From Bugula neritina (Eukaryota > Animalia > Bryozoa): a stretch of DNA of 64,000 bases. Both the position numbers and the translations under genes were made by a program. Location of the stretch: NCBI GenBank assembly GCA_964035545.1, contig OZ037771.1, positions 11,598,480 through 11,662,479 on the forward strand. Direction: 5' to 3'. Position 1 is the stretch's first letter. Each line of letters opens with the position of its first letter. This document shows, in pieces, positions 3,301-42,300 of the stretch. The notes under the pieces were generated by a model that did no database searches, had not been told where the DNA came from, and saw nothing but the letters and a program-made list of their open reading frames with translations.

Positions 3301-3525
3301 GTATAGGAATGTATACAAACAACCACGTCACTGATGAGTTGACTGAATATCATTAAATGTTTGATTTTAGTTGGTGAGCCTTTAGAGGTCAAGCGAAATC
3401 CTGATCCTAGCAATGAAGAGATCAATGAACTTCACATCAAATATGTCTCGGCATTACAGAACCTCTTTGAGGCAAACAAGAAAGAATTTGGTGTTTCAGA
3501 ATTTCATCATTTGAAATTTATCTAA
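305..3525 (+). CDS. DGAT2/MOGAT-family acyltransferase, copy 1 (5 coding exons, intact)
   Basis: Exons 305-450, 1120-1460, 1707-1881, 2236-2435, 3371-3525, all GT-AG and phase-compatible. N-terminus MKVLGLEFAPLFISTRRRLQT resembles the MOGAT EFAPL...RRLQT start. Also has the catalytic HPHG and the motifs [47 protein letters not shown]. Confidence 0.93.
2415..2878 (+). repeat. Degenerate ~45-bp tandem repeat derived from the exon 4/intron 4 junction of copy 1
   Basis: About ten units resembling gaagacc-atag-taacaactgtaggtaag-aaa-atagtactgtgt; the first unit overlaps the true donor at 2435/2436. Confidence 0.8.
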
Positions 3526-6406: not shown

Positions 6407-6625
6407 TCATTAATGTCATTTTAATTACATAAACTTGTATTACACATATGCTACATTGTATTATACATATATTTTATTTTACTATATATAGTATATATAT
6501 ATTATATATTATATATATATATATATAATACAATATGCTATATAATATAGTCAAATAAAATATATGTATAATACAATGTACCATATGTGTCATACAAGTT
6601 TATGTAATTAAATGGACATTAATGA
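6407..6625. repeat. Imperfect long inverted repeat (hairpin) in intron 2 of copy 2
   Basis: tcattaatgtc..ttacataaacttgtattacacatatg..cattgtattatacatatattttattt pairs with aaataaaatatatgtataatacaatg..catatgtg..tacaagtttatgtaa..gacattaatga around an AT-rich centre. Confidence 0.75.
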
Positions 6626-6834
6626 TTGACAAACTCAAGCTGCTAGCATTTAGCAATGCTCGTGACTCCTAGGTGACCCTTAAAGTCACTTGAGCACTCT
6701 GGCTTGAGTTTACACACCTTTTAAATATGCTTTGGTAAAACTATAAGTTTCTACTTTTGCGAAGGTGTGGGCCATGGTACTCTGTTCTGTGCTTATGAGG
6801 GGACAAATCCCGAAACAGCTGCTGTCCACAGATT

Positions 6835-6837
<3 letters not shown>

Positions 6838-6885
<48 letters not shown>
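6838..6885. repeat. (TA)n microsatellite
   Basis: Pure AT dinucleotide run of about 48 nt. Confidence 0.95.
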
Positions 6886-6888
<3 letters not shown>

Positions 6889-7624
6889 ACTATATACATA
6901 TAGTACATTTTTGTATTATGCACATTGCATTTTGTATTATACATACATACAGTATATTGCATCATATTATGTGTATTGTAGTATTTGCAGTATATTGCAG
7001 TATATATCATGTAAATTACATTATATATAGTAAATTATATTCCTTTATTATATAATATAAAATATTGCATTGCATGTACTATGTTGTGTTATTGTAGGGC
7101 TTTGTGATATATCAAACTAGGCTATATTATACCATCACATTGTTTACAGGGTCATGTGGCTGTAACAAGAATAGTCTAGAATATATTCTCAAGTCTAAAG
7201 GTCAAGGTAACGCTGCCTGTCTAATTGTGGGCGGAGCGTTGGAAACGTTAGCTGCACATCCAGGTCACTTTAATCTCAACCTGAATAAAAAGAAGGGCTT
7301 CATAAAAAGTGCAATAAGGACAGGGTAAGTCTAACTTAAATAAAAACAGTTAGTATAAGTTAGTATGATGTACATTGAAAGTGGTAAAGTTAATCAAATT
7401 GACAACACTTATAACATGAATGATCATTGTAGAGAGACATGTGCTAAATCTGTTTCAGGGCCAGCATTGTGCCTGTATTTAGTTTTGGTGAAAACGATTT
7501 ATACAACCAAGTCCCCAATCCTATTGGCTCAAGACTTCGACACTTTCAGATAATGGCCACAGCTTATTTTTGTGTTCCTCCACCATTGTTTTATGGACGG
7601 GGCATTTTGCCTTACAGCAAACCA

Positions 7625-7876
7625 GTCACAACTGTGGGTAGGTGTGCTATGCTAATCACTGTGACAACTGTGGGTCGGTGTGCTATGCTAATCACTGTGA
7701 CAATTGTGGGTAGGTGAGCTATGCTAATCACTGTGACAACTGTGGGTTGGTGTGCTATGCTAATCATTGTGACAACTGTGGGTAGGTGTGCTATGCTAAT
7801 CACTGTGACAACTGTGAGTAGGTGTGCTATGCTAATTACTGTGACAACTGTGGGTAGGTGTGCTATTTTAATCACT
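7625..7876 (+). repeat. 36-bp minisatellite x7 at the exon 4 donor of copy 2
   Basis: Unit gtgacaactgtgggtaggtgtgctatgctaatcact starting at 7625, 7661, 7697, 7733, 7769, 7805, 7841. Confidence 0.92.
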
Positions 7877-9779
7877 GCAGTGATTAAAATGAGACTATCA
7901 TTACTATATGAAAGTGGACAAACGACTTTACAATTGACAAAAAGATATATGATATTATTTCCAACACTGGCAAATAGTCTTCCTTAAGAAGTGTTGCTAA
8001 AGAAGCAATGCTAAATAAGGTAGCATAAAATTCCATGCTAGTATTTGAAAACAGTATTATAGCCTATGTTTTTAGTTGGTTCACCAATAGAAGTAGACCA
8101 GAATAACACACCAACACCTGAAGAGATCAATGAACTTCACACTAGATATGTTGCAGCTCTCACAGACCTCTTCGAAACTCACAAACATAAATATGGAATA
8201 GCTGAAGAAACCCACTTGAACTTGTTTTAAATTACTTTATGATTCCGATTTCATCATGAGAACTCAAATCGTACTAAATTTAGAAACTTTTAAGCCAGTT
8301 TAACATTATGAAGAATAAAATCATGTATATAAATTTCTTTTTTAGAAATCAAAATTGAATTGTACAACAATATTACATTGTGTTTGTATCAAAACTATAA
8401 AGCATGTTATTCCTTAATTCTACTACTATTATGACAAAATTATAGTTCAATTTAGCACAGCTTACGTATTAAGGTGGTCCAACACCAGACATTTATATAT
8501 GCCCAGGCATTCCTCTCAGTACACTTTATTTCAAACATAATATTGGGAGCTTTGCCTATTCTTTGCTGAGTTTTATCAAGTATATGTAGATTATGTAACA
8601 AAAACAAGAGGAAAAGGGGGAGTCAATAGGTCACTTGGTGGCAAAAGATACGCCAAAAACTTCTTTAGCCTATGTTATAAATCTTATTTCTGTATTTAGT
8701 GCAGCTAGACAATACAGCCGCAGAAGTTTTACATCAGTTTGATTGCAACTAAATAAAGTTATATTAAAATAACATCATACTATTTATGAACTAGTATTAT
8801 ATTATAAGTTGATATACATGTGTAAGAAAGTTTTTCTCATAAAGATGGAATTTCAAAAAATTTGAGTCTATAAAGTCAATAGTGGAAAAGTTGTACTAAA
8901 GTTTATAAAAACGATCATGACATGCGTTTTATTTGAGATAAAACGGAACATGCTTTTTACGAAACTTTAAGAAATTTCTAAGAGCTTTGCTGATGACGAA
9001 GAGTATAGCATATACAGTTAGTATAGAACTAACCTCACCGGTGCATCATGTCACTACGTTTTCATGATTTATAAACTAGGGAGTTATCTCCCTGACTGCC
9101 TCAAATGATGGGCTATACACTGCGTTTCTATCATTTACATTTTTCGAAAGTATTTTTCATTCGCCTAATGGAAATAGTTGCATGCATCGAAGCAAAACTT
9201 CAATCTATTGGAATGGGTAAAAAATTTTCATTTACATTATGGAGAAGGGTTCTTTGACAAATTATCCAATGAAAAATTTTGTAACGGAAACAAAGATCGG
9301 TGATTGTGGTGGCTAGTTTTACAGTTACGAGATGTAACAGGCCTGGCCTCAGGCTCGTGAGAATCACACAAAATTTGCGTGAATATTATGATTTATCTTC
9401 TCGTTATAATAAATAGCCTGTGAATGAGTCTTGCACAAAATACAAACAGCAGAAAATTGCCAGACACAGAAACGTGGTAGAAATGAAATAATCATCATTG
9501 CTAAAATTATATTGACCAATCAAATAGTGCTTATCATTAATTTCAATTTTTGTCCATCGTCTGCAGCGAACACGATTTTGCTTGAATTCCCTCAAATTTA
9601 ATCGTACATTTGAGTTTTTATGTCTAATAGTCAAATAGTCAAATATTAATCATCCTAAATCCATTAACGTTTTCTGTAAGCCAAAGTGAATCTCTCTTTA
9701 GAGTTGTCATCTCACAGCCCTTAGTGGCTGGATCTTACAGGTAGCTTGTTCAGTGTCTCCATAATCCATTCAATACTAC

Positions 9780-11870: not shown

Positions 11871-14800
11871 ATGGGGGCAAAAAGACTGCTGGAAATATTT
11901 GCCATCACTCAATGGGTGTGCTCATTCCTCTTCCTGGGCTTTACCTGTCTGGGGTTTATGATTTACCTTGGCTTTACCAGGTATGTTGGCTTTACCTGTC
12001 CAGCTTTACCAGGTATGTAAGCTCCAAAGGCTTGCAATTGAGTTACAAGCTATTTGCTCCTGTTAGTTGGAATACAGGGTACAGCCATAGACATCACACA
12101 GAGACTATTATAGTGATAAGAACTCAAATAATTTATACCCTATTATATTGCAGCAGTGAATGGGTAAAATTATGGTTATATAATATCACCCCTTTGCTAT
12201 TTCACTCAATAAAAATACTTTATTGCTATAGCAGCATTACTGCATACAATTCTGGTTATACCAAAATATTACATTTAAAATTATATATTGCTCTTAACAA
12301 TAATTAGAGAGGTTAGAATTACAGCTGAAAAGAGTAAAAACTCATGATATTTTGATTAAAATAACACATGGAAGTTTAAAGTGACATTCTTATAGTGTCT
12401 GCATGTTTTTTTTATTTAGACTGTGGCCCTTTACCTTAGTATATCTGGCATGGTACTTATATGATAGAAAGTCTCCTCACAAAGGAGGGCGCAGAGTAGA
12501 AGCTATTAGACGTTGGAAGGTCTGGGAACATTTCAAAGACTACTTCCCACTAAAGCTAGTAAAAACTTGTGACTTGGATCCAAACAAAAACTACTTATTT
12601 GCATGTCATCCCCATGGAGTACTCTGTGTCAGCCATTTCGGAAACTTTGCTACTGAGGCTACAGGATTTAGCAAACTCTTTCCTGGAATTGATCCTCACC
12701 TGATTGTTCTAGATGGACAGTTCCAGTTCCCTCTGTACAGAGAATACTTTATGACTACAGGTAGTTTAATTTAACTCTTCAGATTAGAAGCTGTTATATA
12801 TTCATCATTGTACTATGTATGTTATGTCATATTGCAAGTTGTATAATATATGTTATAGTATATATATTGTGTACATTACATTATGCATACTGACGTAACA
12901 AAGGCATTTGACCTGGTCAGAAAAATTGATTAATGTTATAAACTTGTATTATACACATGATATATTGCATCACATATAATATCATATTATGTATATTGTA
13001 TTATGTAAATTGAACAATATGACATATTCTGTTTCCCTGAACAGGATAGAGTGTAGATAGGTGAAGATTACATATATAATATTGCATAATGTATATTTAT
13101 ATGCATATGTAATATTATACATGTACACTGTATTATATTTAGTATATTGTGTTATATATAGTATGTTGTATCAATTTATAAAACATAGTATTTTGCACAA
13201 TGCTATGTTATCATATAACAGTGCTTTTCAAAGTATCCTACTATGTTATATTATTGTAAAGTTTATAGACACAAGAATAAATTATGACTGGATACTCTCC
13301 CTAACATCACAATGGCCTTAACTGTGGTTCGAACCAATGACTTTGTGTTTACTAAGCCATAGTTTAGGGTGCAGACCACGTCTGCACCATAAACTATGTT
13401 ATACTATATAGTATATACCAGGGTTGGGGTCAATTACATGTGAATGTAATTAATTACAATTACAATTACATGAAGATTTGTCAATTACAATTACAATTAT
13501 AATTACAGTTAAAAATAAATGTAATTAATTACAATTACAATTACATGGCAATGTAATTAATTACAATTACAATTACTTTTGTTCTCACAAGAAATAAATA
13601 GAAGTCACTTCTAGGGTCTAACTACCAGGGGCAGTTTTGACAGTGGTGAACCTCTTTTATTTTCTACAGTGATACTATAGGGTCATTCCATACCAAATCA
13701 ACCAACTTTCAAGGGGTCCCACGTCTTTGTGTTTCAGATTTTGCTCATATTTACACTGAATGGACCTACACATGTTGAGATTATCATTCGTGAATATTTC
13801 TGGCCTGACACAAAAACATTTTGAGAAATTACTACTTTGGTAAACAAAGGTTGGAAAATATTTTGAGGAAAATTTGTGATTTATACTTTTAGACCAATTT
13901 ATAAGTAATTTAAAATTTGATTAGGCGAGTATTTGAAATTTTTCAAAATTTACAAAGTTTTGTTCATATTCAATGATTTTGCATATATGCACACAAAGTA
14001 TTCTGTAGTATGTATTGCTACTAGTGCAAATTGATAGATATTTTCAAATCACACAGCAAATTTTAAGGCTCAGTCTAGAAAAATGATTGAGATATAGACG
14101 TTTATAGATTAGTCTAAAAGTAGAAATCACAAATTTTCCTCAAAATGTTTCTCAACCTTTGTCTACAAAAGTAGTCAGTTCTCAAAAAAAATTTGTGTCA
14201 GGTCAAAAATACTGAAGAAGAGTACTTGAGGCATGTGTAGGTCTATTTGGTGTAAACATGAACAAAATCTGAGACGCAAATAGACGCGGGCAATTGGGTG
14301 AGTTAGCATGGAATGACCCTATGCTATATTGACCTAACTATCTGAACTTGTTATTTAACAGTAGGCATTGTAGAAAAAGAAGGAGTTTTTAAGATTTAAA
14401 AGTTTGAAGTAATTGACATGTAATTATAAAGTAATTGTAAAAATCAATTACATTAGATATGTAATTAATTACAATTACAATTACAATTACATTTTTAAAC
14501 CTCAATTACAAATTACATTCAATTACTTGAAAAAATGTAATTAATTACAGCCAATTACAATTACAAATTACAATTACCCCAACCCTGGTATATACCACCT
14601 CATTATTTACAGGGTCATGCGGCTGTAACAAGGATAGTCTAGAATATATCCTCAAATCTAAAGGTCAAGGTAATGCTGCCTGTTTAATAGTGGGCGGAGC
14701 TCTGGAAGCTTTAGCTGCACATCCAGGTCACTTTAATCTCAACCTGAATAAAAAGAAGGGCTTCATTAAAAGTGCTATAAGGACAGGGTAAGTCTAACTT

Positions 14801-15587
14801 ATACCAACAGTGAGTATAAGTAAGTATGATTTACATTGAAAGTATTATAAAAAAATTGATTTATAAATACAATTATTCAATTTGAATAACACTTCCAGCA
14901 TAAAGTGTTATTGTTGAGAGATATAGTGAATCTGTTTCAGAGCCAGCATTGTGCCTGTATTCAGTTTTGGTGAAAACAATTTATACAACCAGGCCCCAAA
15001 CCCTATTGGATCAAGACTTCGTCGCTTTCAGATGATGGCCACAACCTATCTTGGCCTTTCTCCACCATTTTTTTATGCTCGAGGCATTGTACCTTACAGC
15101 AAGCCAGTCACAACTGTAGGTAGGTGTGCTATTTTAATCACTGTGACAACTGTGGGTAGGTGAGCTATTTTAATCACTCTGACAACTGTGGGTAGGTGTG
15201 CTATTTTAATCACTGTGACAACTGTGGGTAGGTGCGCTATTTTAATCACTGTGACAACTGTAGGTAGGTGTGCTATGCAAATCACTGAGACTATCATTAC
15301 AGGTCAACTATTACCTATAATAATGAAAGTTGGCAAATAACTTTACAATTGACAAAAAGTCTTCCTTAAGAAGCGTTGCTAAACAAGCAATAAGAATTCC
15401 ATGCCAGTCATTAAAACAATATATGCTTTTAGTTGGTTCACCAATAGAAGTAGACCAGAATAACACACCAACACCTGAAGAGATCAATGAACTTCACACT
15501 AGATATGTTGCAGCTCTCATAGACCTCTTTGAAACTCACAAACATAAATATGGGATAGCTGAAGGAACCCACTTGAACTTGTTTTAA
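11871..15587 (+). CDS. DGAT2/MOGAT-family acyltransferase, copy 3 (5 coding exons, intact)
   Basis: Exons 11871-11980, 12420-12760, 14613-14787, 14941-15119, 15433-15587. Exons 2-5 match copy 2 in size. HPHG present and no stops. Confidence 0.92.
13419..14587. mobile_element. Non-autonomous hAT-type DNA transposon in intron 2 of copy 3
   Basis: TIRs cagggttgggg.../...ccccaaccctg; perfect 8-bp TSD gtatatac (13411-13418, 14588-14595); subterminal (aattac)n arrays at both ends; not seen in the copy 2 intron. Confidence 0.9.
13680..14319. mobile_element. MITE with long imperfect TIRs nested inside the hAT element
   Basis: Ends gggtcattccat / atggaatgaccc flanked by TA; internal arms ~13800-13885 and ~14120-14205 are reverse complements. 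Confidence 0.8.
15107..15286 (+). repeat. 36-bp minisatellite x5 at the exon 4 donor of copy 3
   Basis: Unit gtgacaactgtgggtaggtgtgctattttaatcact, homologous to the copy 2 array. Confidence 0.9.
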
Positions 15588-22600: not shown

Positions 22601-23081
22601 AAGGTTACTGTATAATCTCTCAGAGTTAGGGTACAGAGTAGGTCTGGGCTATTTGTTACAACTTTTCATTATGTAGCAGTGAGCTCCTGAGAAAGAAACT
22701 TTTACTTTTACTCTCGAGAAAATAGCCAGAGTGAGAGAAGCAGAGAACCAATGCAAACAAAAGTAAAATGCCAGCACTAAAATTAGGTACACTATAATAA
22801 TGGACACAGTCAGTTCTCAGCTAATAGGTAGGGTATAGAGGTATTTAGTAATGCTGTAATTAGGGGTAAAATAACCAAAGTCTGACTTAAAGATGAAAAG
22901 CAAACTCTACACTGTCGTGTTTTGAGATTGTTGTCTTCTCTTTACTAACACAGTGACATATTTGACTACAAAAAATCAATTATCACACAGCTCCATTCTG
23001 TAAACACCACTTAAAGTTACAGCCATCATTTGAACTTCATTATTTGTGACTGAAACAGAATAGTTGAAAGAAGGCCAAGGC

Positions 23082-26000
23082 ATGGAGATGACTGATTTTA
23101 TCCAAGTAAGTTACAAATATACTTTTTATATTATACCTGTGTATAATCAGCTATACCTTTTCAAGAATGGTAGAATTGAAGAAAAGTAATAGCTTTGATC
23201 GTGTGTAATAAGACTTGTATCTTATTCGCTGTTAATTATCAGCTGTCATATTCTGTTTCCAGCTGTTTAAACTACAAACTGTCATTGTGTAGCTATGCTA
23301 GGCATAGCCTAGAGCCACACGGTGCGTATTTTCGCATGCGAAAATTGAAATCACAAGAAGCAAAGGTGTCCACTGTGCGCGTTGAGAAAACCTTCGCACT
23401 TGTCGCTCTGCATTTTCAACGCAAGTGCGAATCGTCTCTGTCGTCGTCACATAATTGGCTGGTAGCTATTCAGCGAGCCCAATTTCTTTATTTAGTACTA
23501 TATTCCAGTAAATTGCGTTTTATTGAAAGCGAGTGCGATTTAAAAATGAAAGCTTTATTTATAACGCATCACTGACGCTACAGTGGACGCCTTTGCTACC
23601 CGTGATTTTAATTTTCGCATGCGAAAATACGCACAGTGTGGCCCTAGGCTTACTGCTAGTGAGAATATAGTCTTGTAACGATATAATAAAACTTTGCTGT
23701 ATTTGTGGATAGTCAAATAAGATGCTAGTATACCAGTAGAGTGGACTTTATTCAAATTTCCGGCCACAGCCCAGTAGTGCATTTGTCTATTAAAGGTATC
23801 TACTACACCAGAATCTGTATGAAGTATTTTCAGCCTTTTTTTATGCTTTTTTTGATGTCTAATTGGAAAAAGTTGACATTTTAAACTCAACGTTGTTATT
23901 CCACTCTTCTCCGGTTTAAATAAGTAATCAGTCTTTTACCACTTACTATGCTTTTTTGTAGATTGATGAAAAAAATGCTAAGCTCTGCAACCTATTGCTT
24001 GTAGGAGTGGTAGTAGGAGTAGCATGTGTATTGATCTGGAAAAGATACTGGTCAGAGTCAAGTATGTAAATAAGTCTATATTTTCAACCCCATCGATAAT
24101 ATTAATTGAAATGAAAATGAAGACTTACTAAACTTTTAGTAAAAATGTATTTGATTTTTTCATTAAAAGACACATAATAATACTTTAGAAAGAGCTCCAA
24201 TAAAATATTAGCTATAAAGCAGGCTATGGTTTCTTCCAGTTTTCTCAACCATTCAGAGTGGAAAGTTAAGCTACTTTTAATTTTTGACTGACTAGTGAAA
24301 ATGTTTCTGGCCAGCTGGTATTAAATTAACAGACATGAGCTCAGCCAATATTTGTCTACAATAACCCATTGTATCTTTATGACTGCACATAGTACAGCAT
24401 AGTTAATCTTCTCCAATCAACAATTTATCTAGGAAGAAATGTAGCAAATGGGTTTTCATATTATAGTCATATGAATCCAGAATTTTAGCCATTAATGTAG
24501 TTATACCGTTAAATGCACAACTAGATTGGTACTAGTCTAATTTCCAAGATGTTGAGATTAACTTATTAGCTCATTTATAATTAGCCTTGCTTTCACAATT
24601 AAATAAAACTTGATGGGTATTAGCATTAGTTTTATGCCATGAAGAAAAATTAAAGGGGCAGATCGTGAGTAGCCGCTAGGCTATTAGATGTACCTTTTCA
24701 CATGAGATGAACTTTAGTGAAGGAGACAATGTTAACATTTTTGATTAGCTTTTTCATGCATTTATCAAGGTACATTTGTTATTTTCGTCACAATTTCAGC
24801 AGTACCCACAATTAACCTAAGACCACAAAGAGCGAAGTTGATTTCTGTGTGTCTAGCCAAGGAACTAGGTGGTGACCGTCTGCACCCCATCCAATCCGAG
24901 TACGAGGCAGCAAGTTTAGACCTGTTTGGTTTAACAACGGAAAATCGTTTAATATATGACTTGAATCTGTACTCTGTTTTTAGAAAGACAACTTTTGTAC
25001 AAAAGGTAATTGGCATGATTGATGACCTTGAAGATGCTAAAGCATGTTATCAGAGTGAAAAATAATTCACACTAACTAATTTAAATTTACATTTACATAT
25101 AAAATGGTATAGTTTTCACATTTAATTTTGGGGTAAATCTAGCTGTAGTATTACAACTTCATGATTTTAATGATTTTTGTGAGATCAGCTATTTCATCAA
25201 TATAGTCAATCAACCTCTCTAGCACTTTTTTATAATTGACAATGCTTGAGAAGAGGCATCGCTGGTGTTAAACGAGTTTCCAAAAAGCACCCGTTAGAAC
25301 TCAAAATTTTTAGTGCAAAACATAAGTGTGATTTAAAATATAGAATAACTATTAAACTAACATTATAAGCAATTAATATTTCAAGATTTAAAATTCAATT
25401 TTATAATCAATAATTTAAGAACTAAAGCTGCTTTTTAGCAAAGCATCCAACAGAAGTCTAACATTTATATTTGAGTTAGGAGTTGAGCAAATTATTATCC
25501 ACGATTATTTTGCAGAACCCATCGACACATGACACAACATATCTGTCTGGAAGAAATTGTGAATTAAAGGGGAGTTTAACTGCTGACTTAGCTGCTCGAA
25601 TATTTGACAACTACAATGCAAGTGCTTGTGGGCGCATCACAGTAGAGTTGAAAGCAAACTTTGACCGCTTTCAACTGGATAAAGTGAATGAAAGTTTTCT
25701 TGGAGATTACGTAGAACATAGGTGAGAGCTAACTTGCTAAATGGCCAGCATAACAAATACACTTTTACTGAATGAAATATATTAGACTGCTTTAGAAGTT
25801 TAAATTGAACCCAAAAATAAATCATTTTAACATAAACTCTCCTCTAACTATTCTAAAAAAATAAATTCTATATAATATTGGCAATGGAATAGTGAAGGTC
25901 AATAAAGCCTTTCTCTGCTTTATAAAATGTTATTTGAAACACAGACATTTTTTTTAGCAATTTATAATTTTTAAAAAAGTTATTTCACTAAAAATTTAAT

Positions 26001-29000
26001 ATAACTGTGATTTCCTTTAAACCTAATTTAGAAAAAAAAATTTATCCCGCAAACTATATAGTATGCTGATTATTTTTATTTTGTTATATAATCTAGTGAA
26101 ATAAAAAAAGATCACCACCTAATTAAAAAGGCATTTGCTGGTGAAGAAAAGTTGTACGTTATCACTGGAGTAGTGCGGACAACCACACCAACTGAAGTCT
26201 ATCTCAACTGGGATCTTAAAAAATGTCAGCCCTCTCAGGTTTGAAGCACACATTTCCAAGCTATCTATATTATTTTATTTGTATTCAGCAGCTGCTATTA
26301 TCTTATTGTAACCTTATGGTTTGATATTGCAGTTGTGAGTGGTAAAGCAATAATTGTATATTTGCCAGCTTCAAAATGCTGGCTTGCGCTTAGTTTTGGT
26401 TACAAATGAGTCACTGACACTAAAAGCAGATTTTCTAGAAGGGTATAAATGAAACATTATTTTCGTATTTTCTACTTGAAATAGTTATTGAGTCATTTTA
26501 CTTAAATTAGTACACAGTATATATCTAGCTTTTAGCTATTTTTCACAATTTAGCGGCTATAATGTATATATAGTTTCTTGTATTAAACTAATAAAATATT
26601 AACAAGTACAGCTGAATAATTAGGACATTTTCTAATTTTGATTAATTTTCTACGTTTGTTGTTCCTAATATTTTAGTAAATTTCATGTCTGATGCTTTTT
26701 TCACACCCAAGGTAACTGAAAAATTAAGAAAAAACATGGAAAATCAAGCAAAATTAGAAAACAACCTTGCTTATTTGTTTGTATTTGTTAATATTTCATC
26801 AGTTTCATGCAATAAACTGTACACATTAGCAGCTAAAATTGAAAAAAATAGCTAAAAACTAGATATATATTATATACATGTATATAGTGTCTACTAAATT
26901 AAGTACAATGACCCTATTGATAATCAGAGATTTATTTTTGAAATTATCATCTATTCGCAGGATGTGTTGAAATGCAAAAAAAATTTTGCAGTTCATATAT
27001 GTCTTGGTGATTTCAGCATCCTAACCCCATTGCACAGCTTTTGCAGTTGCAATGCGCACACCTTTTGAAAATACACTACAAGCAGTTTCTTGTATGAAGC
27101 AGATTAGGGCTGTGGAATTTTGTAGTCCCTGTTATATTAATTCAAAGTAATAGACACTAAAGCCACATTGGTTCATTAAACTAGATAATTTTCAAACATA
27201 ACAGTATTTAATTGAGAACTAGAACTTGCTGATTCAATAAGCCCAAATTTTACAAGATGTATTTTATTGCAACTTTATTTTGCTATATATAGGAACGTAA
27301 GAATGAGGGAGAAACTATAACAAGCAACCAGTCTAGAAATGAGGGCATGCAAGTCAGTGGGGGATTGAGCTACAGAGAAAATAGGAAAGATTTAAACATA
27401 AATTATGATAGTATTCATTGGCGAAAAATATATCTTGAAGCAGGAACAGTGGTGGCATATGAACACATCCCTTTAAAGGAGTTGTGTGGTATGTTTCTAC
27501 AATGTGGTAAGTAAAAGCTATGCATTATTAGACTTGAAATCTGCAACAACTTGCAACAAATTTTCTGTCCAGCAACAACTTTTCTGTGCAACATAATTAT
27601 TGTGCTTCTAGATGCTTTTTTGAATTTGAATGTTTTGCTGATATGGGTTTCTTAAATGAAATGCTAACAGAAGTTCCAATTGGTCACACTCTATAACTCA
27701 AGCTAATGCTTTTACACGTTTAGTTAGGTACATATAGGACTTTTATTACCAAGTCGAGTAATTAATAATAATAATCAAATGATACCATAATACATAAATG
27801 CGTTAGGAGATGAAATTAAAATTATTCAAAAATAGCTGATGGGCAACTGGGTAGAAGTTGGAAAGCCTTTCCATTGAAACAGATGACTAAAATCAGGCAA
27901 TATGTGGGTAAGATCTGGCAAAAGCAAGCTCCACAAGAAAACATCCAACAAGGTAAGGGAAATTGTTCAGAAACTAACTTAAAGATTGGAGAGGCTTAAA
28001 TAAACTGTTAAAGGACATAGGTAATCAGAAAAGAAATTATTTTGAAGTTTTAAGGCACAAAATCTCAAATTCAAACATGGTAAACATAATGAACTCACCG
28101 AATTAAGTAAAAAACATTTTATGTGATGACTAGGTGATTAATTGCTGATAATCAAGTAATTTTACTATAATCAATAAGGATATAAATGGGGCCTATCCAG
28201 GTTATAGGACATTAGTTTTCACTTGCTAGCTGGAATGCAGAGTAAAACTTGAAAAATTCAAGTATAGCAAACAAATTTTTGTAACAAAAGTTGGTGCAAA
28301 GAAATGCAGGCCTGCATGTTCTATAATATACTTGGTTATTTTGTAGATATCACTACGGTTAACACCACAACAAATGATGGTGAGTTACTTCAACTTAATA
28401 TTATATCAGTTTTAGAGCTACTATTTATTTTCATGAGTTAATATCTGGTCTCATTGTGTTTTGATGAGAATTATCAGAATTTGCATATTATTTCTTACAA
28501 GCTTACTAACCATAAATACTTATATACATGTGTCTCCAATTTTGTATTCGGTGTTTATATCTTTTCAAACATGCTAAAATTTAATTTTTCTGCTCTATAT
28601 CAGCAACATGCAATACTATGACATCACATACACTGGTTATATATCACTGCAGACTAACAACACACACACTCCTATATCAAATTGATACTGTAAAACAAGG
28701 CAATGCCAATTGAATGCATGGATGTTTGTGCAAGTATATTTTACTAAAACGCATTTTCCAACTAATTACCATTTGTCTACAATACTACAACTTCCGCAGT
28801 GCATGAAGCACCTGATATTTCGCAACTTTTATAACTCTGCAAGAAACTGTAGTATTGTGTTTATAATATTTTAGGTGATGTCACCAATGACACAGCACTA
28901 GACTCTTCAGCTGCTGCTTATCTCTCAGGTCCTGGCTCTGATGATCAGCTACATGTAGGAAATGACACTGCAGGTACTAATCAGCCAAGCATTGGCCTAA

Positions 29001-29008
29001 AGCTATGA
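23082..29008 (+). CDS. Gasdermin-like pore-forming protein with N-terminal transmembrane segment and short C-terminal tail (~346-352 aa, 8 exons)
   Basis: Exons 23082-23105, 23962-24061, 24800-25005, 25516-25721, 26097-26238, 27293-27488 (or 27506), 28347-28379, 28875-29008. All GT-AG, phases join into one ORF. Colinear gasdermin N-domain motifs: [37 protein letters not shown]...[65 protein letters not shown] at ~29287. Confidence 0.82.
23307..23649. mobile_element. PIF/Harbinger-type MITE, copy in gasdermin-like intron 1
   Basis: TIRs gcctag(a/g)gccacac..tgcgtattttcgcatgcgaaaatt / aattttcgcatgcgaaaatacgcacagtgtggccctaggc; flanks ATA/TTA; closely similar to 34786-35129. Confidence 0.88.
26490..26914. 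mobile_element. Degenerate long-TIR MITE in gasdermin-like intron 5
   Basis: Arms ~26490-26610 and ~26775-26914 are imperfect reverse complements; termini gagtcatt / aatgaccc(ta) resemble the element at 13680-14319. Confidence 0.6.
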
Positions 29009-31220: not shown

Positions 31221-34200
31221 TCAGTTGAGTTGGTAAAACAACACCTTCTCCTCACTATATCTCGGTACAATCAAAGTATTCCCAGAAACATACAAATCAT
31301 AGACAGGAGATGAAGATCTTTCAGTAGAATCAGAAATATGAGTCACAACTTCTCCTGCAATAAAACAGTGTAAATTAATACAATATATCAGTTAGACTTA
31401 TAAAGCATTATACAGGGAGCATTACAAATAGAGAGCACAACTTCCCAGTATATCACAGCGCAATATAAACTGTGCTGAGCTACAACAGTATGCCTATAAT
31501 GTAGTTGGAGTATATATATATTATATCGTGTAGTTAGAGTAGTAGTAGTTAGTCTGGTAGTTAGAATACAATGGTACTAACATATTATGTAAAGATCTCA
31601 CCTGTATTACTATCCAGTAACCAGAGAGTAGGTGTAGTACTATTATTCATCACATAAACCATTCCTCTCTGATACGCCACACCTTGAGGTTCACTCACGT
31701 GTTGAGACTCCCAACAGCTTTTGCCGTTCGAAATGTCAAGTTTAAAGACTCGGGAGGAGTCAGTGTCAGATATAACAACATAGTTAGTCTCCACACTGCA
31801 GATAGCTGTAGCTCCAGAACCAGTCAGTAGAGGACAAGGGAGGCTTTTCTGTACCTCCCCGGTAAAAGAATAGAAAGTGAGTGACTTACTATCACCACTA
31901 GGGACTATAATCAGATCATTCGTTACTGCTAGTTTGTTGCACCAACCTTTGCTGTTGCCAGACCACTTGGTAACTAAATTCCCAGACAAGTCATGGACAC
32001 AGACTGTATAGTTACTATCAGCCACTAAACTGACTACTCTGTCATTAAATACTCTCACACATTCTACAAAGCTATTAAATTTGGTAAGGAAATCACCTAA
32101 TCGGTATTCTCTATGGATCAGTTTTACTGTTTTATCATCTAACCCCACATAAGTGATACCCTCATGTTGAAATACTGAGTTACACTGTGATGAGACATCC
32201 ACAGTGTGGGACAAAGTCATAGACTGAGGGACAAAACCAGTAGTTTTCAATCCATGTGATACACTAACTTCTTCATACTGTGGGTAGACAATTCCTACTT
32301 CAACTTCTCTCTTTTCGTCTAAAGTTTAAGAGATATTAACCTATGGTAGTTCAATATTAATGAGCATTTATACTTATACAAAGAGTAGTTACTGAAGGAT
32401 TAATTTACAAAAGTTGCAAGTTTGGATCGCTAGGATGTGAAACTTTTATATCATATAATAGCCGAGATAGTTATGCATTTACTAGTAAGATTTGTCCTAC
32501 CATGTGTGAAAAATGAAAAAAGACATTTGAAAAAAAGCTACCAGTCTGAGAATTGCATAAAATTTGTATTCATAAATTTATGAGTATGATAGCGTCATGT
32601 GTGTAAAAGCCAAAAAGGACACTTCAGAGAAAGCCATTGGCATAAAAACTATAAAATTACTATGAAAAATCATTTAAATACCATTTTACTAACCTTTGAC
32701 TTTCAGAGTTGCTATGTTACGCAGTTTAAGTGAAGGTAGATTATCAGACACCAACTTTCTCATACTGTCACATATTTCTTCATACCTGGTCACCAGATCT
32801 ACCTGTATGTGTACTAATCATAGTAAATTATAAGATATAAACACATTCATGGTATTATAATTAGTGGTATGTAATACATATATAATAATAATATCAATTC
32901 CTAGGAGGAATTTCTCATTTCAAAATAAAATTATGATAAAATTTCCAATTGATATAACTGACTGCAAAATAACATGTAGAGATCATCTTTTGAATTTGAT
33001 TAACTATTCCACAGGAACTTGTGAAGACAAAATATCAGCTTTACTTGTCATATTTACAATAAACTATAAATATATTTTTACATGCAGTAATACACAGTTG
33101 ACTCGCAACAATACAGGAAAATTACTAAGTTAACACAACAATAATATTTATTACTTAGAATTTAAAGCCAACACATTACATTGGTAATAGAGCACCTGGT
33201 GGCAGCTGTCAAGTTTAGCCTCTACTTGAAGTTTATGTCTACTCAGCTCTGCCCATTTCACTCCAACATTTTCCTCCATGAAACGAAGTAGATCAGATTT
33301 CACAGTCTGTCTCAGTTCCACTAAATCCTCTTCTAACTTCCTGTACTTCATCTGTATTGCTTCCACCTAATAATGAATATAACAGTCAGGCTATGCTGTG
33401 GTAAGAGTAGTAAAGTAAAGCAAAATGTGTATTACCACAGCCATAATCATGCCATATATCAAAAAAGCCGATGAAAAAAGAAAGGGTAAAATTTGAGGTG
33501 AAGGAAATGTTCCTCATTAAATATATTTTATATACAACAGAATTTGATGAATGGTAATAATCTATTACTTTGCGTCAGTATTTACTGAAAAACTACTTTG
33601 GCAAATTACACACTATTTTAGATATAAAATATAGATTAACTAGAACTAAAAAGGCACTTTCCAAGCAGCATTTAACTATATAATGTAGATTATATATAGA
33701 TTTGTCATACTACAATATAGTCCAGTTTGATGTTCAGTAGTAAAATCAGTAGTAAATCTATGGCTTTAGACACCTTCAGAGCACCTGTTCCACTGACTAC
33801 GAATGCGAAATTTGACAGGGCATGGCAAACTTGTCACATGCAATAAACAACCAGTGAATGACACACTGGATTAATACACCCTTTTCACAAGTCCCTCTAG
33901 GGCAGGGCTGCCCAACAGGTGGCCCCGGAGGCGAATGTGACCCCCAGCCTACTTTTATTATATGGCCCTCAAAAGCATAAAACTAAAAATAGCTTTCACA
34001 GTATACATTAATTAAAGTAAAAGAACTACATTTCAAATTAGTTCTTTCAACAACATATGGATATAGCAGAATGCTTGTAGCTAACAACCTAAATCCCACA
34101 AAAAGAGTGCATTGATAATCATCAAGGAGTCTCCAATGTAAAGTTCAGACTTCCACTTCACTATTACCATACGATTAGCATGTAACAGGATGACGTAATT

Positions 34201-36411
34201 TTATTATATAAAATTAATGAAACGATTTCTAATTATTCAACTTCCTGTGAGACATTATCAACCAATTACTATCCAATCCAGTCTAACCTGTTCAATACAA
34301 GTCTTCCGGAGTGTTCCAATCATCTCCTTCGTCTCTTTTTCAAAATTCGACACAACTTCAGATGTTTTCTTGAATAAACTGGAGAGTTGTTCTTCCCTGT
34401 CAGTTACTTGAACTTTCAACTCATCAATTTCTGTTCTTAGTTTCAACATTAGCATGTCTAGAGACATGAGTTGATGGTTCGATCCTACAGCAGATATTAG
34501 TAAGAAATGATAACAGCATTAAAGTATTAATAGCTGTAACCTAACTGTCCATACCTTTGCCAACATAATTATAAACAAGTTTAAACTATACAATCTAGTA
34601 CCAAAGCAATAATTGAACACCAGCATCTAAATGGAATTATCATTTCAATTGATTACTAATCTGAAATTGGCCACTTAATCGATGACAAAACAAAAACTTT
34701 GAGAAGTAGCTTTTACTCGGTGAAATTTTCAACTCGGTCAAATTGAATTTCTGACTGAAAACCGTGACGGTATAAAACACTGTTAGCCTAGGGCCACACG
34801 GTGCGTATTTTCGCATGCGAAAATTGAAATCACAAGTAGCAAAGGTGTCCACTGTACACGTTGAGAAAACATTCGCACTTGTCGCTCAGCATTCTCAACG
34901 CAAGTGCGAATCGTCTCTGTCGTCGTCACCTAATTGGCTGGTAGTTATTCAGCGAGGCCAACTTCTTTATTTTAGTGCTACATTCCAGTAAATTGCGTTT
35001 TATTGAAAGCGAGTGCGATTTAAAAATGAAAGCTTTATTTATCACGCGTCACTGACGCTACAGTGGACACCTTTGCTACTAAGGATTTCAATTATCGCAT
35101 GCGAAAATACGAACAGTGTGGCCCTAGGCTTAGTGCTAAAAATCAACAAAGATGGTCTCACAACTCCCAATATTATTGAAATGTCATATAAAACAAGATG
35201 TCTAACAGACTCCTACCATCAGTACAATTAGATTCTTCAGCTGAACACTCTGCACACACAACAGAGAGACAACTCCTACAAGCCAGACTATACTCTGTAT
35301 TCTTATGTACAGTGCAGAATCTTGGTGTTAGTTGTTGAGCTTTTAGTCTGTATTCACTGATAGGAATTGTAGAGTGGTTCATACTTAGGTCTTCATGCAT
35401 CTAAAACATACTAATTATGATATAAAATATTGTCTTTTACTTTCAAACACATAGAAATTGTCTGCTCTGAAGTAACAAAAATAGCTGAGTTATAATTATT
35501 TTGCTTTTGCAGTGTTGCACTACTAGATTGAGTGAGTGTTACTGCATAAACCAGAAAAAGGCTCTTAATTAGACAGTTATGCCAAAAACTTAATCAGATT
35601 GAACAGAAAAATGAAAAACCTGATCCCACTGTTTTGCATAGTGCTGCCTAAACAGATATATTTCATTGAAATGAAAGCAAACTTCTGTCATCTGTGTTAT
35701 TTGTCTTGTAGCTGACTTTATTCATCAGCTCATGCTTCTGCTTTTTCTATGACAATAAAACCTAGCTTTGGTTTGTATAAGACAGAGACTAGTAAACATT
35801 TACCTCTTGATGTTTAGCACAATATTTGGCTGAACAAGTTGTACAGTAAGTAACTGCAGCCTCATTTAAAACTCCTTTTTTAGAGCAAGTGTCGCAACAG
35901 GAGTTGTCTACTCTACATGGGAGATTGTTTACTGGAATGTCAAACACTTTTCTATAAGAAAAACAAAATAAATGTGAGATAAAATGAACAGAAGAAAGTT
36001 CTGAAAAAATGGCATACTGCTAAGTTATATCAACAATCTATAACTTTATTATGAAACAGCATACTTCAGCAACTAAATAGTTTTCAGAGAAGTAAAATTT
36101 AAAGTATATATAATACTCAATAGCTTGTTTACTATGTTAGTAATGTATAAAAAATCCGGAAATAATTAAATAATTTTGAAATGCAAATTATTACACATAT
36201 TATAGTATCTGAAAAACGAGTGGATGTCAGACAACCTGACTTGAATGTACCTGCAAAGGGGGCATCTCAAAACACCCTGAATACTGAGATAATCCAACAA
36301 ACAACTGAGACAATGTGAGTGACCACATGGCAAGTATCTGGGGTCATCCATTTTTTCCTCTTTTTTCAAACAAAATCCACATTCTGCTTGATTCTCCACA
36401 GGGTCGGTCAT
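31221..36411 (-). CDS. TRIM-like E3 ligase (RING, two B-boxes, coiled coil, NHL-like beta-propeller), copy A, ~606 aa
   Basis: Exons 36411-36251, 35951-35804, 35400-35217, 34484-34288, 33366-33196, 32802-32694, 32318-31602, 31354-31221 (1821 nt, in frame). RING CGFC..LPCGHSHCLSC..CPLC; B-box1 CDTC..YCTTCSAKYCAKH; B-box2 CTVH..CRSCLSVVCAEC; beta-strand repeats such as EPQGVAY. Confidence 0.88.
33903..34040 (+). mobile_element. Truncated hAT/Charlie-like element end in a TRIM-A intron
   Basis: cagggctgcccaac..ggccc start typical of hAT MITEs; missing from the paralogous intron of copy B; no matching right TIR found. Confidence 0.4.
34786..35129. mobile_element. PIF/Harbinger-type MITE with TTA target-site duplication
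   Basis: TIR gcctagggccacac / gtgtggccctaggc; TTA at 34783-34785 and 35130-35132; empty site cactgttagtgctaaaa in the paralogue at ~53356-53372. Confidence 0.93.
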
Positions 36412-39383: not shown

Positions 39384-42300
39384 TTATGGGGTAAATAGGT
39401 AAATTAATTTGTGGATAGGCCTATCTAAGTATGTGGGTGGAGCTAGTCTCACACCTTTACTGTTCAACTCTGTAGTTGCTAGTTGCACCTTTACCTTACG
39501 AATTAAGTCATCTCTAGTTTTATGTGTTTCTATCACTCTAGCTATGGGCCATTCGTTCCTATGTGTATTTTCATTTTTGACAAGTACTATGTCACCTTTG
39601 CGAATATTTGATTGCGGCTTATGCCACTTTTGCCTTCCCTGAAGATTGTGCAAATACTGTGTTTTCCATTTTGTCCAGAACGAGTTAGCTAGGCTTTGAA
39701 CTTGTCTCCATCTTTTATTGGAGTACATATCATTTTGGTCAAATTGTCCTGGTGGCGGTGGTACATGCTTTGATTTCATTGTCAAGAGTTGATTTGGTGT
39801 TAGTGGTGTATTACCATCATCTAGTGTGTTAAGAGGTCTACCATTTACTATGGCCATTGCTTCATAAAAAAATGTTCTCAATGTTGTTGAGTCTAGCCTG
39901 GTTTTATGCATATCTAACATGGAGTTTAGCACATTTCTAACACTTCGTATTTGTCTCTCCCATACACCACCCATATGGCTGGCACTCGGTACATTTGTAA
40001 CAAAGTCTAAATCGTTTTCCCTTGCAAAAGACTGGATTCTTGTTTGGTTTGACTTGAGTTCTTTAAATGCGCCAACAAAATTTGTGCCACAGTCTGATCT
40101 AAGTTGTCTGATAGGTCCCCTAATAGCAATGAGGCACCGCAGTGCATTTATGAAAGCATCTGTAGTCATGTCATCTAATATTTCTAAGTGAATTGCCCGT
40201 GAGGCCATGCATGTAAATATTAGACCGTATTTCTTTAATTCTGCTCTCCTATCCTTTACAATAAATGGTCCAAACACGTCACATCCTACATAGGTAAATG
40301 GTGGAGCTGGTTCAACTCTTTCTACTGGCAAGTCTGCCATCTTTTGGGTCATTGGAGCATGTCTTTGTTTTCTACATGTTATGCATTGGTGAATGTAAGA
40401 GCTTACTACTCTTGAGATTCCTATAATGTAATAGCCTGTAGACTTAATTTCACTAATTGTCAAATTCTTTCCTTGATGTGCAACCTTCTCATGGCACTGT
40501 TTAATCACAAGTTTGGTTACATGTGAGTTGCTTGGTAACATTACTGGGTGCTTTTCATTATAGTTCAACTGTGAATCTCGGAGTCGTCCTCCTACACGTA
40601 TCAAGCCATGTTTGTCTAGAAATGGATCTAGCTTTGCTAGTTTACTATCTTTACTTACACATTTGTCTTTACTTAGCCTGCAATATTCATCTGAAAATGA
40701 CTCTTTTTGTACCCACTGCATTATTAGATGTTTAGCATCTGTCAAGTCATCAATTGTGAGTCTGGGAGTTATGCTACCTTTATGCTTTACCAATCTTTTG
40801 GCTGCACTTACTGCTTTGATAGCATTTTTTAGGTCTGAGAATCTGCTTAGGTGTTGCTCTAATGAGCACTTAGATTGAGGCTCTGTGTTGGTTTGTAAAC
40901 ATAATTTGACCTCTGGGTCGGAGGAATCTATCTCATAGTTACTGTCTGTATTCAACATATGTGATAAATCTGGCTGCCATAAAAATTTTGGTCCTTGGAA
41001 CCAGTCTGTACTGAGTAGCTTTTTGATACTAGCACCTCTGGATGCTATATCTGCTGGATTTATGCTTGTGTTGATGTAATTCCATTGTGCTGCTTTGCTT
41101 TTGGATAGAATTTGTTGTACCCTGTTTGCTACAAATGGTTGAAATTTCTTAGTTGTGTTGTGTATGTAGCCCAAGACTACTTTAGAATCAGTCCAGAAAT
41201 ATTCATTTGTTATAGGCATTGCTAATTCTGTGGTTACTACAGTGGACATTTTTGAGGATAGTACAGCTGCCATTAACTCTGCTCTTGGCATTGTTATAGG
41301 CTTTATTGATGCAACCCTAGATTTTGCAGAAAGCAATGTGCAGTGTATGTTGTCATTTACATCAACTAGTCTCAGATAAGTGCATTGACCCAAACCATTG
41401 TTACTGGCATCACAAAAGTGATGTAGCTCTGTTAGTCTGATAGTACTTAGGCTTTTAGGTTTCAAGCATCTTGGAATTTTTATTTGAGGCAGTTCTGCTA
41501 ATTCTCTTTGCCATGTTACCCAACTGTTTTCTAGTTCTGGTTTTAGTGCATCATCCCAATCAGCTTTGTCTTTGCACATTTCTTGCAAAATGTTATTTCC
41601 AATTAGAATAACTGGTGAGAGGAACCCTAAGGGATCAAAAACCGAGGCTATTGTAGACAAAACGCCTCTTCTAGTATGTGGTTTCTCTTTCATGCTAGCT
41701 TTGAACTGAAATTCATCATTTTTTATGCACCAATGAACACCTAGCACACGTTCTACTGGCATATCTGTGTTTAAGTTTAAATCTTTCATTGTTTCAGCAT
41801 GTTCAGATTCAGGTATTGTGGCTAGAACTGCTTGGTCATTGGATACAAACTTATGGAGTCTTACATTTCCCTTGGCACATATATTAATTGCACTCTTGAT
41901 TACACTGACTATTTGTTCGTGTGAGTCTAGGCTCATTAGTCCGTCATCTACATAAAAGTCATTTTCAATAAAGTTCACTGCCTGTTTGTCACTGTCAGTA
42001 CCAGAGTCCCCGTGATCTCTAGCCAATGTTCTTAAGCCGTAAGTCGCACAAGCAGGAGATGATTTAGCCCCAAATAAGTGAACTGTCATGCGGTACTCAA
42101 CAATGTCAGTCATAGTCTCGTCTTTAAACCAGAGAAATCTAAGGTAGTCTCTATCTGACTCATGTACTTTGAACATGTGAAACATTTTTTGTATATCACA
42201 CATTACAGCTATTTGCCCTTTTCTGAATCTATGCAATACTCCTACTAGGTTGTTCATAAAGTCTGGTCCTTGTATCAAGTGATCATTGAGACTTGTGTTC

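What the first reader, a model, noticed from the sequence alone, without database searches (positions are those of the whole stretch)
23082..24061. N-terminal signal-anchor on the gasdermin-like protein: a pre-tethered pore former
Seen: exons 1-2 encode [41 protein letters not shown], a ~19-residue hydrophobic stretch with an acidic N-side and KR on the C-side. There is no in-frame ATG at the start of the pore domain in exon 3. Established: characterised gasdermins are soluble cytosolic precursors whose pore domain begins at or near residue 1, and the positive-inside rule predicts N-out/C-cytosolic topology. Inference: the pore domain is tethered to the cytosolic face of ER, mitochondrial or plasma membrane. 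The anchor may target pores to one organelle or act as the inhibitory element released by cleavage in the linker.
Basis: partly seen in the sequence, partly recalled or inferred. Interest (0 to 1): 0.82.

Follow-up and report, generated by a model that had tools for sequence, protein, structure and literature searches.

The report
Possible membrane-anchored gasdermin in a bryozoan
A moss-animal (Bugula neritina) gene for a cell-killing pore protein has lost its usual start codon and most likely starts two small exons upstream that add a membrane anchor, an arrangement I did not find described for gasdermins, but no transcript evidence could be obtained here.

Summary
Exon 1 (23082-23105) and exon 2 (23962-24061) have good splice sites and join exon 3 (24800-25005) in frame. 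They encode 41 residues with a 19-residue, very hydrophobic stretch between an acidic N-side and KR.

Exons 3-6 are a diverged gasdermin pore domain. They match classical gasdermin genes of the same genome exon for exon and share every intron position and phase. Those classical genes start with Met at Pfam position 1, just after a 5'UTR intron. The window gene keeps that acceptor but has no Met until residue 245 of the 346-residue model. Two of three diverged relatives also lack the start codon. The window gene is still intact (dN/dS about 0.5), so translation must begin upstream.

A decayed duplicate on another chromosome keeps a hydrophobic exon, IWKRYW and the same donor about 0.7 kb upstream of its exon-3 copy.

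Weak points: no RNA evidence, exon 1 is eight codons and unconserved, and a rival first exon (22800-22827) would give a soluble protein. Topology and function are inference.

Verdict: about 0.55 that a gasdermin with an N-terminal signal anchor is real, a new variant of a known kind. Earlier notes of this scan report short gasdermins elsewhere in this genome, none with an anchor.

The parts
22893..23081 (+). Putative 5'UTR of exon 1: 189 nt without any ATG, with an in-frame stop 7 codons before the start codon
   Evidence: only 2.2-2.7% of the gaps between ATGs in the window are this long; upstream in-frame stop. The transcription start is unknown.
23082..23105 (+). Exon 1, coding part: ATG (G at -3, G at +4) plus 7 codons, donor GTAAGT
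   Evidence: Generic donor score 8.8. It is the nearest of 13 candidate first exons that could feed exon 2 in phase 0, and the second best by donor score. It is not conserved in the chromosome-8 duplicate.
23290..23650 (.). MITE-like element with terminal inverted repeats inside intron 1; not part of the coding model
   Evidence: Read. A second copy lies near 34776-35176 (similar translations).
23962..24061 (+). Exon 2 (100 nt, enters in phase 0 and leaves in phase 1): acidic flank, hydrophobic segment, KRYWSES
   Evidence: Only two copies exist in the genome. The duplicate on C8 keeps the 3' part, the donor GTATGT and a hydrophobic reading frame.
23983..24039 (+). Coding sequence of the 19-residue hydrophobic segment (residues 16-34), the predicted signal anchor
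   Evidence: KD19 = 2.65, additive Hessa sum -1.5 kcal/mol, 11 of 2056 background segments as hydrophobic.
24800..25005 (+). Exon 3: linker plus the start of the gasdermin pore domain (about residue 52 onwards); no ATG
   Evidence: Profile comparison with first exons of classical paralogues gives E 2.6e-4, with residue 13 of the exon on paralogue residue 4. The acceptor is kept in L016, L018 and the C8 copy.
25516..25721 (+). Exon 4 of the pore domain (ends in phase 2)
   Evidence: Weak match to paralogue exon 2 (E 0.063). Same end position and phase as paralogue P1. 57% identical copies on C8 and 50-56% identical copies in JGI contigs L016/L017.
26097..26238 (+). Exon 5 of the pore domain, with the LYVITGVV motif
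   Evidence: Pfam PF04598 at 13.3 bits, profile positions 137-169. hhalign to paralogue exon 3: probability 93%, E 3.9e-7. 49% identity to the C2:2.05 Mb gasdermin exon.
27293..27488 (+). Exon 6 of the pore domain (AGTVVAY strand); donor in phase 1. An alternative donor lies at 27506 and a read-through stop at 27512-27514.
   Evidence: hhalign E 1e-4 to paralogue exon 4. Same donor phase as P1. Alternatives.
28347..28379 (+). 33-nt micro-exon of the acidic tail (subject of another note; only its frame was checked here)
   Evidence: it enters and leaves in phase 1 and has good splice sites.
28875..29008 (+). Last exon of the tail, with stop TGA at 29006-29008
   Evidence: the eight-exon frame closes here. 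The tail has 55 residues, 8 D/E and 1 K/R. No Gasdermin_C signal was found in the window.

Best explanation
This is a lineage-specific gasdermin of the bryozoan Bugula neritina.

Classical gasdermin genes of this genome have a non-coding first exon, a 5'UTR intron and then ATG at the first residue of the pore domain. In the subfamily of the window gene that ATG was lost. The reading frame now runs through the old acceptor into upstream exons.

In the window gene the start is most likely the ATG at 23082 (exon 1). Exon 2 adds a 19-residue hydrophobic helix. The product would be a 346-residue single-pass protein:
- a 15-residue acidic N-terminus;
- the signal anchor;
- a linker of about 17 residues;
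- a pore-forming domain with no helical inhibitory domain;
- a 55-residue acidic tail.

By flank charge and the length of the hydrophobic segment, the short N-terminus would cross the membrane (inference). The pore domain would then sit on the cytosolic face, already held at a membrane.

Steps that are shown: the exon anatomy, gasdermin homology, the missing start codon, intactness of the gene, and conservation of the hydrophobic exon in a duplicate.

Steps that are inferred: the splicing, the topology, which membrane is targeted, and how the pore is restrained. An N-terminal Flag tag blocks mouse GSDMD. The extension may therefore itself restrain the pore or need removal. Equally, the protein may not form pores at all.
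For: 1. Anatomy and phase fit.
2. Gasdermin homology exon by exon. hhalign E values are 2.6e-4, 0.063, 3.9e-7 and 1e-4 for exons 3-6 against the matching exons of paralogues that pass the Pfam cut-off. All intron positions and phases (0, 2, 0, then donor phase 1) are the same as in paralogue P1.
3. Four classical paralogues have Met at profile position 1, 0-20 nt after an AG acceptor. The window gene, the C8 copy and L018 keep the acceptor but have no ATG.
4. The copies are old (dS 0.5-0.8), yet the window gene is intact with dN/dS 0.47-0.61. It is therefore translated, and from upstream.
5. Exon 2 is the nearest phase-1 feeder of exon 3. Such hydrophobicity is rare by chance, 0.5% of open segments.
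6. The C8 duplicate has, about 0.7 kb upstream of its exon-3 copy, a hydrophobic open stretch of 24 codons, IWKRYW and the donor GTATGT. In a rough neutral-drift simulation at the same 67% identity only 0.8% of trials stayed open and as hydrophobic.
7. The ATG at 23082 has G at -3 and +4 and follows a 189-nt stretch free of ATG, a 2-3% tail of the window's distribution.
Against: - No transcript or annotated protein could be reached. The library of 1.84 billion proteins holds only two genomic ORF fragments of relatives.
- Exon 1 is only 8 codons and is not conserved in the C8 copy.
- A rival first exon, 22800-22827 (donor score 8.4, A at -3, G at +4), could join exon 3 directly in phase and would give a soluble protein.
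- The C8 copy is frame-broken, so it shows past constraint, not present constraint.
- Relative L016 has an in-frame ATG four codons before its exon 3, so a start without an anchor is possible in some copies.
- N-terminal tagging abolishes GSDMD activity (PMC4670995). A 51-residue extension may therefore be incompatible with pore formation unless it is removed.
- By K/R counts alone the flanks differ little (2 against 3).
Confidence: 0.55

Rival explanations
1. Soluble gasdermin with a different 5' end. Exon 3 is fed by another upstream exon, for example 22800-22827 (nine codons, phase 1) or one further upstream. Exon 2 is skipped, is an alternative exon, or is a relic.
For: 13 ATG-initiated candidates within 8 kb could feed exon 3 in phase. 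The best, 22800-22827, has a strong donor and a good start context. There is no RNA evidence for any model.
Against: The 22800 exon has another ATG 32 nt upstream and is not conserved anywhere. Exon 2 is open exactly from acceptor to donor. Its hydrophobic frame is kept in the C8 duplicate.
Confidence: 0.22
2. Dying gene. The subfamily lost its start codon and the window copy is an untranslated or decaying paralogue. The hydrophobic open frame upstream is a leftover or chance.
For: The only other copy in this genome (C8:11.505-11.510 Mb) is fragmented and frame-broken. The Pfam signal is weak.
Against: Eight exons give 346 codons without a stop in a 32% GC genome. All splice sites are intact. 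dN/dS is about 0.5 against relatives separated by dS 0.5-0.8.
Confidence: 0.12
3. The exon model is right but the topology or role of the segment differs. It would act as a type II anchor or a cleaved signal peptide. The pore domain would then face the lumen or the outside, like perforin-2, and might be released at the RPQR motif just before the pore domain.
For: The K/R counts of the flanks are close (2 against 3). RPQR followed by AK sits exactly at the canonical start of the pore domain. Anchored lumenal pore formers exist (PMC13631362).
Against: Net charge difference (C minus N, about +3), the acidic 15-residue N-flank and a 19-residue, very hydrophobic core favour N-out. There is no small-residue cleavage motif. 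RPQR reads GPQG, DPQG or RPQG in the three relatives.
Confidence: 0.08
4. Exons 1-2 form a separate small gene for a 43-residue single-pass peptide. If intron 2 is retained, the frame stops two codons after the donor.
For: The read-through frame ends at 24065-24067.
Against: The gasdermin would then have no start codon at all. The donor and its phase fit exon 3. The exon 2-intron 2-exon 3 unit was duplicated together.
Confidence: 0.03

Closest known systems
Classical invertebrate gasdermins (GSDME-like 'GSDMin'; here the B. neritina paralogues on C2 and C8)
   Same: Homologous pore-forming domain with the same four-exon layout and the same intron phases. Shared LYV[IV]T and GTV[VL]AY motifs.
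   Different: Those genes start with Met at residue 1 of the domain, right after a 5'UTR intron. The window gene has no start there and carries about 51 extra N-terminal residues with a hydrophobic helix. It is also strongly diverged: its exons fail the Pfam cut-off one by one.
Pore-domain-only gasdermins: TrichoGSDM of Trichoplax, RCD-1 of Neurospora (review PMC12547243)
   Same: No recognisable C-terminal inhibitory domain, so restraint must come from something other than the classical intramolecular brake.
   Different: TrichoGSDM is a soluble disulfide-linked dimer of 250 residues that starts at the domain. No membrane anchor is described for it.
Perforin-2 / MPEG1 (PMC13631362, PMC7593815)
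   Same: A pore-forming immune protein held on a membrane by a single transmembrane helix before activation. This is the nearest functional analogue of a 'pre-tethered pore former'.
   Different: Unrelated MACPF fold. Its anchor is C-terminal, its pore domain is lumenal and it travels the secretory route.
Lipid-anchored gasdermins: palmitoylated bacterial gasdermins and Cys191-palmitoyl GSDMD (PMC12547243)
   Same: A hydrophobic moiety raises the membrane affinity of the pore domain and takes part in its regulation.
   Different: That is a post-translational acyl chain, not a genetically encoded transmembrane helix.
Pelomonas pyroptolysin N-terminal extension (bioRxiv 10.64898/2026.10.05.756811)
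   Same: A gasdermin-fold protein with an unusual N-terminal extension of about 21 residues, proposed to be autoinhibitory.
   Different: It is a bacterial secreted toxin. Its extension adds a beta-strand to the fold and is not a membrane helix.
BAK (own knowledge, not tested here)
   Same: A cell-death pore former that sits permanently anchored on its target membrane and is activated in place.
   Different: Unrelated fold, a C-terminal tail anchor and the mitochondrial outer membrane.

Membership tests
Gasdermin pore-forming domain (Pfam PF04598) | Match to the family profile above the curated cut-off (25 bits) | tested here: inconclusive
   Tested exon by exon, only exon 5 matches (13.3 bits, E 0.057, profile positions 137-169). 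The window gene was not among the 16 genome hits. The joined protein was not scanned because it has no reference.
Gasdermin pore-forming domain (Pfam PF04598) | Colinear homology to bona fide family members | tested here: met
   Exons 3-6 match exons 1-4 of same-genome paralogues whose first exons pass the cut-off (26.8-32.2 bits). hhalign E values are 2.6e-4, 0.063, 3.9e-7 and 1e-4.
Gasdermin pore-forming domain (Pfam PF04598) | Shared gene structure with family members | tested here: met
   Exon ends fall at the same aligned residues, with phases 0, 2, 0 and a phase-1 last donor, as in paralogue P1. An acceptor lies just upstream of the domain start in all copies.
Gasdermin pore-forming domain (Pfam PF04598) | Gasdermin fold with two membrane-inserting beta-hairpins; pore formation | not testable with these tools
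   The spliced protein has no reference, so it was neither folded nor compared with solved structures. A PDB profile search with exon 3 alone gave only spurious hits.
Classical two-domain gasdermin (PF04598 + PF17708) | C-terminal helical inhibitory domain | tested here: not met
   No Gasdermin_C signal in the downstream open frames or anywhere in the window in a six-frame genome search. The next gene downstream lies on the other strand. This exon-wise search has low sensitivity.
Classical two-domain gasdermin (PF04598 + PF17708) | Pore domain begins at or next to the initiator Met | tested here: not met
   No Met in exons 3-5. Met occurs only at residues 1, 3 and 245 of the model.
Signal-anchored single-pass membrane protein (type III, N-out/C-in) | Uncleaved N-terminal hydrophobic segment of about 19 residues or more | tested here: met
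   19 residues, KD 2.65, additive Hessa sum -1.5 kcal/mol. This is my own arithmetic; no dedicated predictor was available.
Signal-anchored single-pass membrane protein (type III, N-out/C-in) | More positive flank on the C-terminal (cytosolic) side; short N-terminal flank that can be translocated | tested here: inconclusive
   The net charge of the N-flank is -2 (about -1 with the N-terminal amine). The C-flank of 15 residues is about +2. K/R counts are 2 against 3. The direction agrees with the prediction but the margin is modest.
Signal-anchored single-pass membrane protein (type III, N-out/C-in) | Membrane integration and topology shown by experiment | not testable with these tools
   Needs expression, fractionation and protease protection.

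The most novel reading that the evidence does not exclude
A gasdermin that is made as an integral membrane protein. A genetically encoded N-terminal signal anchor would hold a brake-less pore domain on the cytosolic face of one membrane. Death or organelle permeabilisation would then be decided by where the protein is anchored and by a local trigger, not by release of a soluble fragment. It would have arisen when a 5'UTR exon was turned into coding sequence after loss of the ancestral start codon.
Probability: 0.4. Interest if true: 0.78.

Novelty: new variant of a known kind. Interest (0 to 1): 0.55.

Why it matters
All gasdermins characterised so far are described as soluble precursors (a 2025 review, PMC12547243, lists none with an anchor). 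They reach membranes only after cleavage, reduction or acylation.

A naturally anchored one would be a new way to aim and restrain a pyroptotic pore. It would also be a natural test of whether the N-terminal helix of the domain must be free, since an N-terminal tag kills GSDMD (PMC4670995). And it would be a clear case of a 5'UTR exon becoming a targeting signal.

It adds to the picture, noted elsewhere in this scan, that this bryozoan holds many gasdermins without the usual brake domain. If the exon model is wrong, this is simply one more diverged short gasdermin paralogue.

Tried and rejected
- **Pfam, exon by exon.** Only 13 bits for exon 5.
- **PDB profile search with exon 3.** Spurious hits only.
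- **Library of 1.84 billion proteins with exon 3.** Two short genomic ORFs and no full-length or transcript-derived protein.
- **The JGI contigs behind those ORFs (L016-L018).** They end 404-806 nt upstream of exon 3. One carries a MITE there, so the position of the anchor exon is not covered.
- **Word-index protein search with the exon-3 open frame.** Nothing. Exon 2 alone is too short for that tool and for the search for related loci.
- **Two metagenome scans.** The scan with an exon-3 alignment found nothing. The scan with a degenerate WKRYW-plus-donor pattern gave 71 chance hits, none related.
- **Rfam on the window.** Nothing.
- **Exons 1-2 as the end of the upstream gene.** Rejected: the last DGAT2-like gene ends near 15581.
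- **Exon 2 as a repeat.** Rejected: only two copies in the genome.
- **Cleaved signal peptide.** Judged unlikely: long core, acidic n-region, no small-residue motif.
- **Furin-type release at RPQR.** Not conserved in relatives.
- **The joined model.** The spliced model was assembled only inside scripts, for frame, stop and Met bookkeeping. It was not searched against any database, scanned against Pfam or folded, because it has no reference. That joined step is left out.
- **Source of the DNA.** The contig is not human; it is bryozoan.

Full report
**Where this is.** The window is G000:C7:11598480-11662479 of a 216,009,554-base assembly. It is AT-rich (about 32% GC) and intron-rich. The size matches the published 216.00-Mb genome of the bryozoan Bugula neritina (PMC11480708). 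The only outside relatives lie on JGI contigs whose names carry AY690838, cited in the B. neritina mitochondrial-genome paper (PMC2678162) and in other bryozoan papers. The contig is not human.

**The observation.** It is confirmed to the base.
- Exon 1 is ATG at 23082 plus seven codons, with donor GTAAGT.
- Exon 2 is 23962-24061, after ttttttgtag and before GTATGT. It is open over exactly its 100 nt.
- Exon 3 begins at 24800 after tttcag. Its reading frame needs one base from the exon before, which 24 + 100 nt supplies.
- Residues 16-34 form a 19-residue stretch with mean hydropathy 2.65. Only 11 of 2056 open segments of the window's six-frame translation are as hydrophobic.
- The N-flank is acidic (net -2) and KR follows the stretch.

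**Is the downstream gene a gasdermin?** Yes, but a diverged one.
- Exon by exon, only exon 5 touches Pfam PF04598 (13.3 bits).
- The same genome holds classical gasdermin genes on C2 and C8 whose first exons pass the cut-off.
- Each window exon matches the corresponding paralogue exon, in order. hhalign E values are 2.6e-4 (exon 3), 0.063 (exon 4), 3.9e-7 (exon 5) and 1e-4 (exon 6). The shared motifs are LYV[IV]T and GTV[VL]AY.
- Exon ends fall at the same aligned residues with the same phases as in paralogue P1 at C2:2.05 Mb.
- No Gasdermin_C signal follows. The frame closes through a 33-nt micro-exon and a last exon into a 55-residue acidic tail. That tail is the subject of another note on this window.

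**Why an upstream coding exon is needed.**
- Four classical paralogues start with Met at profile position 1, 0-20 nt after an AG acceptor. They therefore have a 5'UTR intron right before the start codon.
- The window gene keeps that acceptor but has no ATG there. It has no Met in exons 3, 4 or 5 either: Met occurs only at residues 1, 3 and 245 of the 346-residue model.
- The same holds for the C8 copy and for relative L018. L016 has an ATG inside the polypyrimidine tract, probably by chance.
- These copies are old (dS 0.5-0.8). The window gene is nevertheless intact, with dN/dS 0.47-0.61 in exons 3-4.
- A gene kept that long must be translated, and so from upstream. This argues against a pseudogene.

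**Is the upstream exon the hydrophobic one?** The evidence is indirect.
- Exon 2 is the nearest exon that feeds exon 3 in phase.
- Its sequence exists only twice in the genome.
- The second copy lies at C8:11.505-11.510 Mb among rearranged fragments of the same gene. There it sits about 0.7 kb upstream of a partial exon-3 copy, as in the window.
- That copy keeps the donor GTATGT and IWKRYW. Upstream of these it has a 24-codon open stretch that is only 67% identical in DNA but equally hydrophobic.
- The frame of that copy is broken by 11 extra bases.
- In a rough simulation of neutral drift to the same identity, 0.8% of trials stayed open and as hydrophobic. The exon was therefore under coding constraint at least in the past.

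**Exon 1 is weaker.** It has eight codons and is not conserved. In its favour, it has a good start context, and an in-frame stop and a 189-nt ATG-free stretch lie before it (a 2-3% tail). Of 13 candidates able to feed exon 2, it is the nearest and the second best by donor score.

**What speaks against the model.**
- No RNA evidence could be reached.
- The library of 1.84 billion proteins returned only two genomic ORF fragments.
- The contigs behind them stop short of the anchor position.
- Metagenome scans gave nothing real.
- A rival first exon at 22800-22827 could join exon 3 directly and give a soluble protein.
- The joined protein was not searched, scanned or folded, because it has no reference. 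It was assembled only in scripts for frame bookkeeping.

**Mechanism.** My best reading (0.55) is a single-pass protein: a short acidic N-terminus outside, the helix in the membrane, about 17 linker residues, then a brake-less pore domain on the cytosolic face.
- The topology is inferred from net flank charge (C minus N about +3) and from the long hydrophobic core. K/R counts alone are close (2 against 3).
- The first helix of the gasdermin domain lies at the membrane surface in known pores (own knowledge). A tether at that end is therefore geometrically plausible.
- An N-terminal Flag tag abolishes GSDMD function (PMC4670995). The extension could thus equally act as a restraint that must be removed, or could disable pore formation.
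- An RPQR motif sits exactly before the pore domain but is not kept in relatives.

**Comparison with what is known.** A 2025 review of gasdermin activation lists cleavage, palmitoylation, disulfide-linked TrichoGSDM dimers and RCD-1 pairs, but no transmembrane-anchored gasdermin (PMC12547243). My other searches found none either. The nearest functional analogue is perforin-2, an unrelated pore former held by a transmembrane helix (PMC13631362).

**Verdict.** If real, this is a new variant of a known kind. It is not yet shown.

Noticed in passing
G000:C8:11505000-11510000 (L012, L014, L015): Rearranged fragments of the same gasdermin subfamily, in descending order on the minus strand: two exon-4 copies (one with a stop), an exon-2-like piece with its frame broken by 11 extra bases, and the first 30 codons of exon 3. 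JGI contigs L016/L017 look like the intact counterpart in another B. neritina lineage (dS 0.17 in exon 4).
   Followed up: partly
window 24715-24799: The last 60-85 nt or so of intron 2 (around TTATTAGCTTTTTCATGCATT) are as conserved as exon 3 itself in the four copies (window, C8, L016, L018). This may be the branch-point region or a regulatory element.
   Followed up: no
L001, L002, L003, L005 (classical gasdermin paralogues on C2 and C8): All four have an AG acceptor with a T-rich tract 0-20 nt upstream of their start codon, that is, a 5'UTR intron directly before the ATG. This is the likely ancestral state from which the window gene's coding 5' exons arose.
   Followed up: partly
window 23290-23650 and about 34776-35176: Two copies of a MITE-like element of about 360 nt with terminal inverted repeats of about 40 nt. 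One lies in intron 1 of the gasdermin gene. A different MITE sits in the matching intron of JGI contig L018.
   Followed up: no
window 1112-3519, 5998-8224, 12403-15581: Three tandem DGAT2-like (PF03982) genes on the + strand. Exon matches of the first two contain in-frame stops. More copies lie about 70-90 kb beyond the window's end on the other strand.
   Followed up: no
window 39384-45065 (-): A 1893-aa open frame of a BEL/Pao-type retrotransposon (Peptidase_A17, DUF1759, integrase zinc finger, DUF5641).
   Followed up: no
window 55968-62000 (+): Gypsy-like retroelement (protease, RT, RNase H, integrase) with 52-58% GC in a 32% GC genome. Other notes of the scan deal with it.
   Followed up: no
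window 31585-32250 and 49856-50569 (-): Two long open frames on the minus strand with weak beta-propeller (PQQ_2-like) matches. They probably belong to the gene that bounds the gasdermin locus downstream.
   Followed up: no
window 24820-24831: RPQR directly before the residues that align with the canonical gasdermin start. This is a minimal furin-type motif, not conserved in the three relatives.
   Followed up: partly
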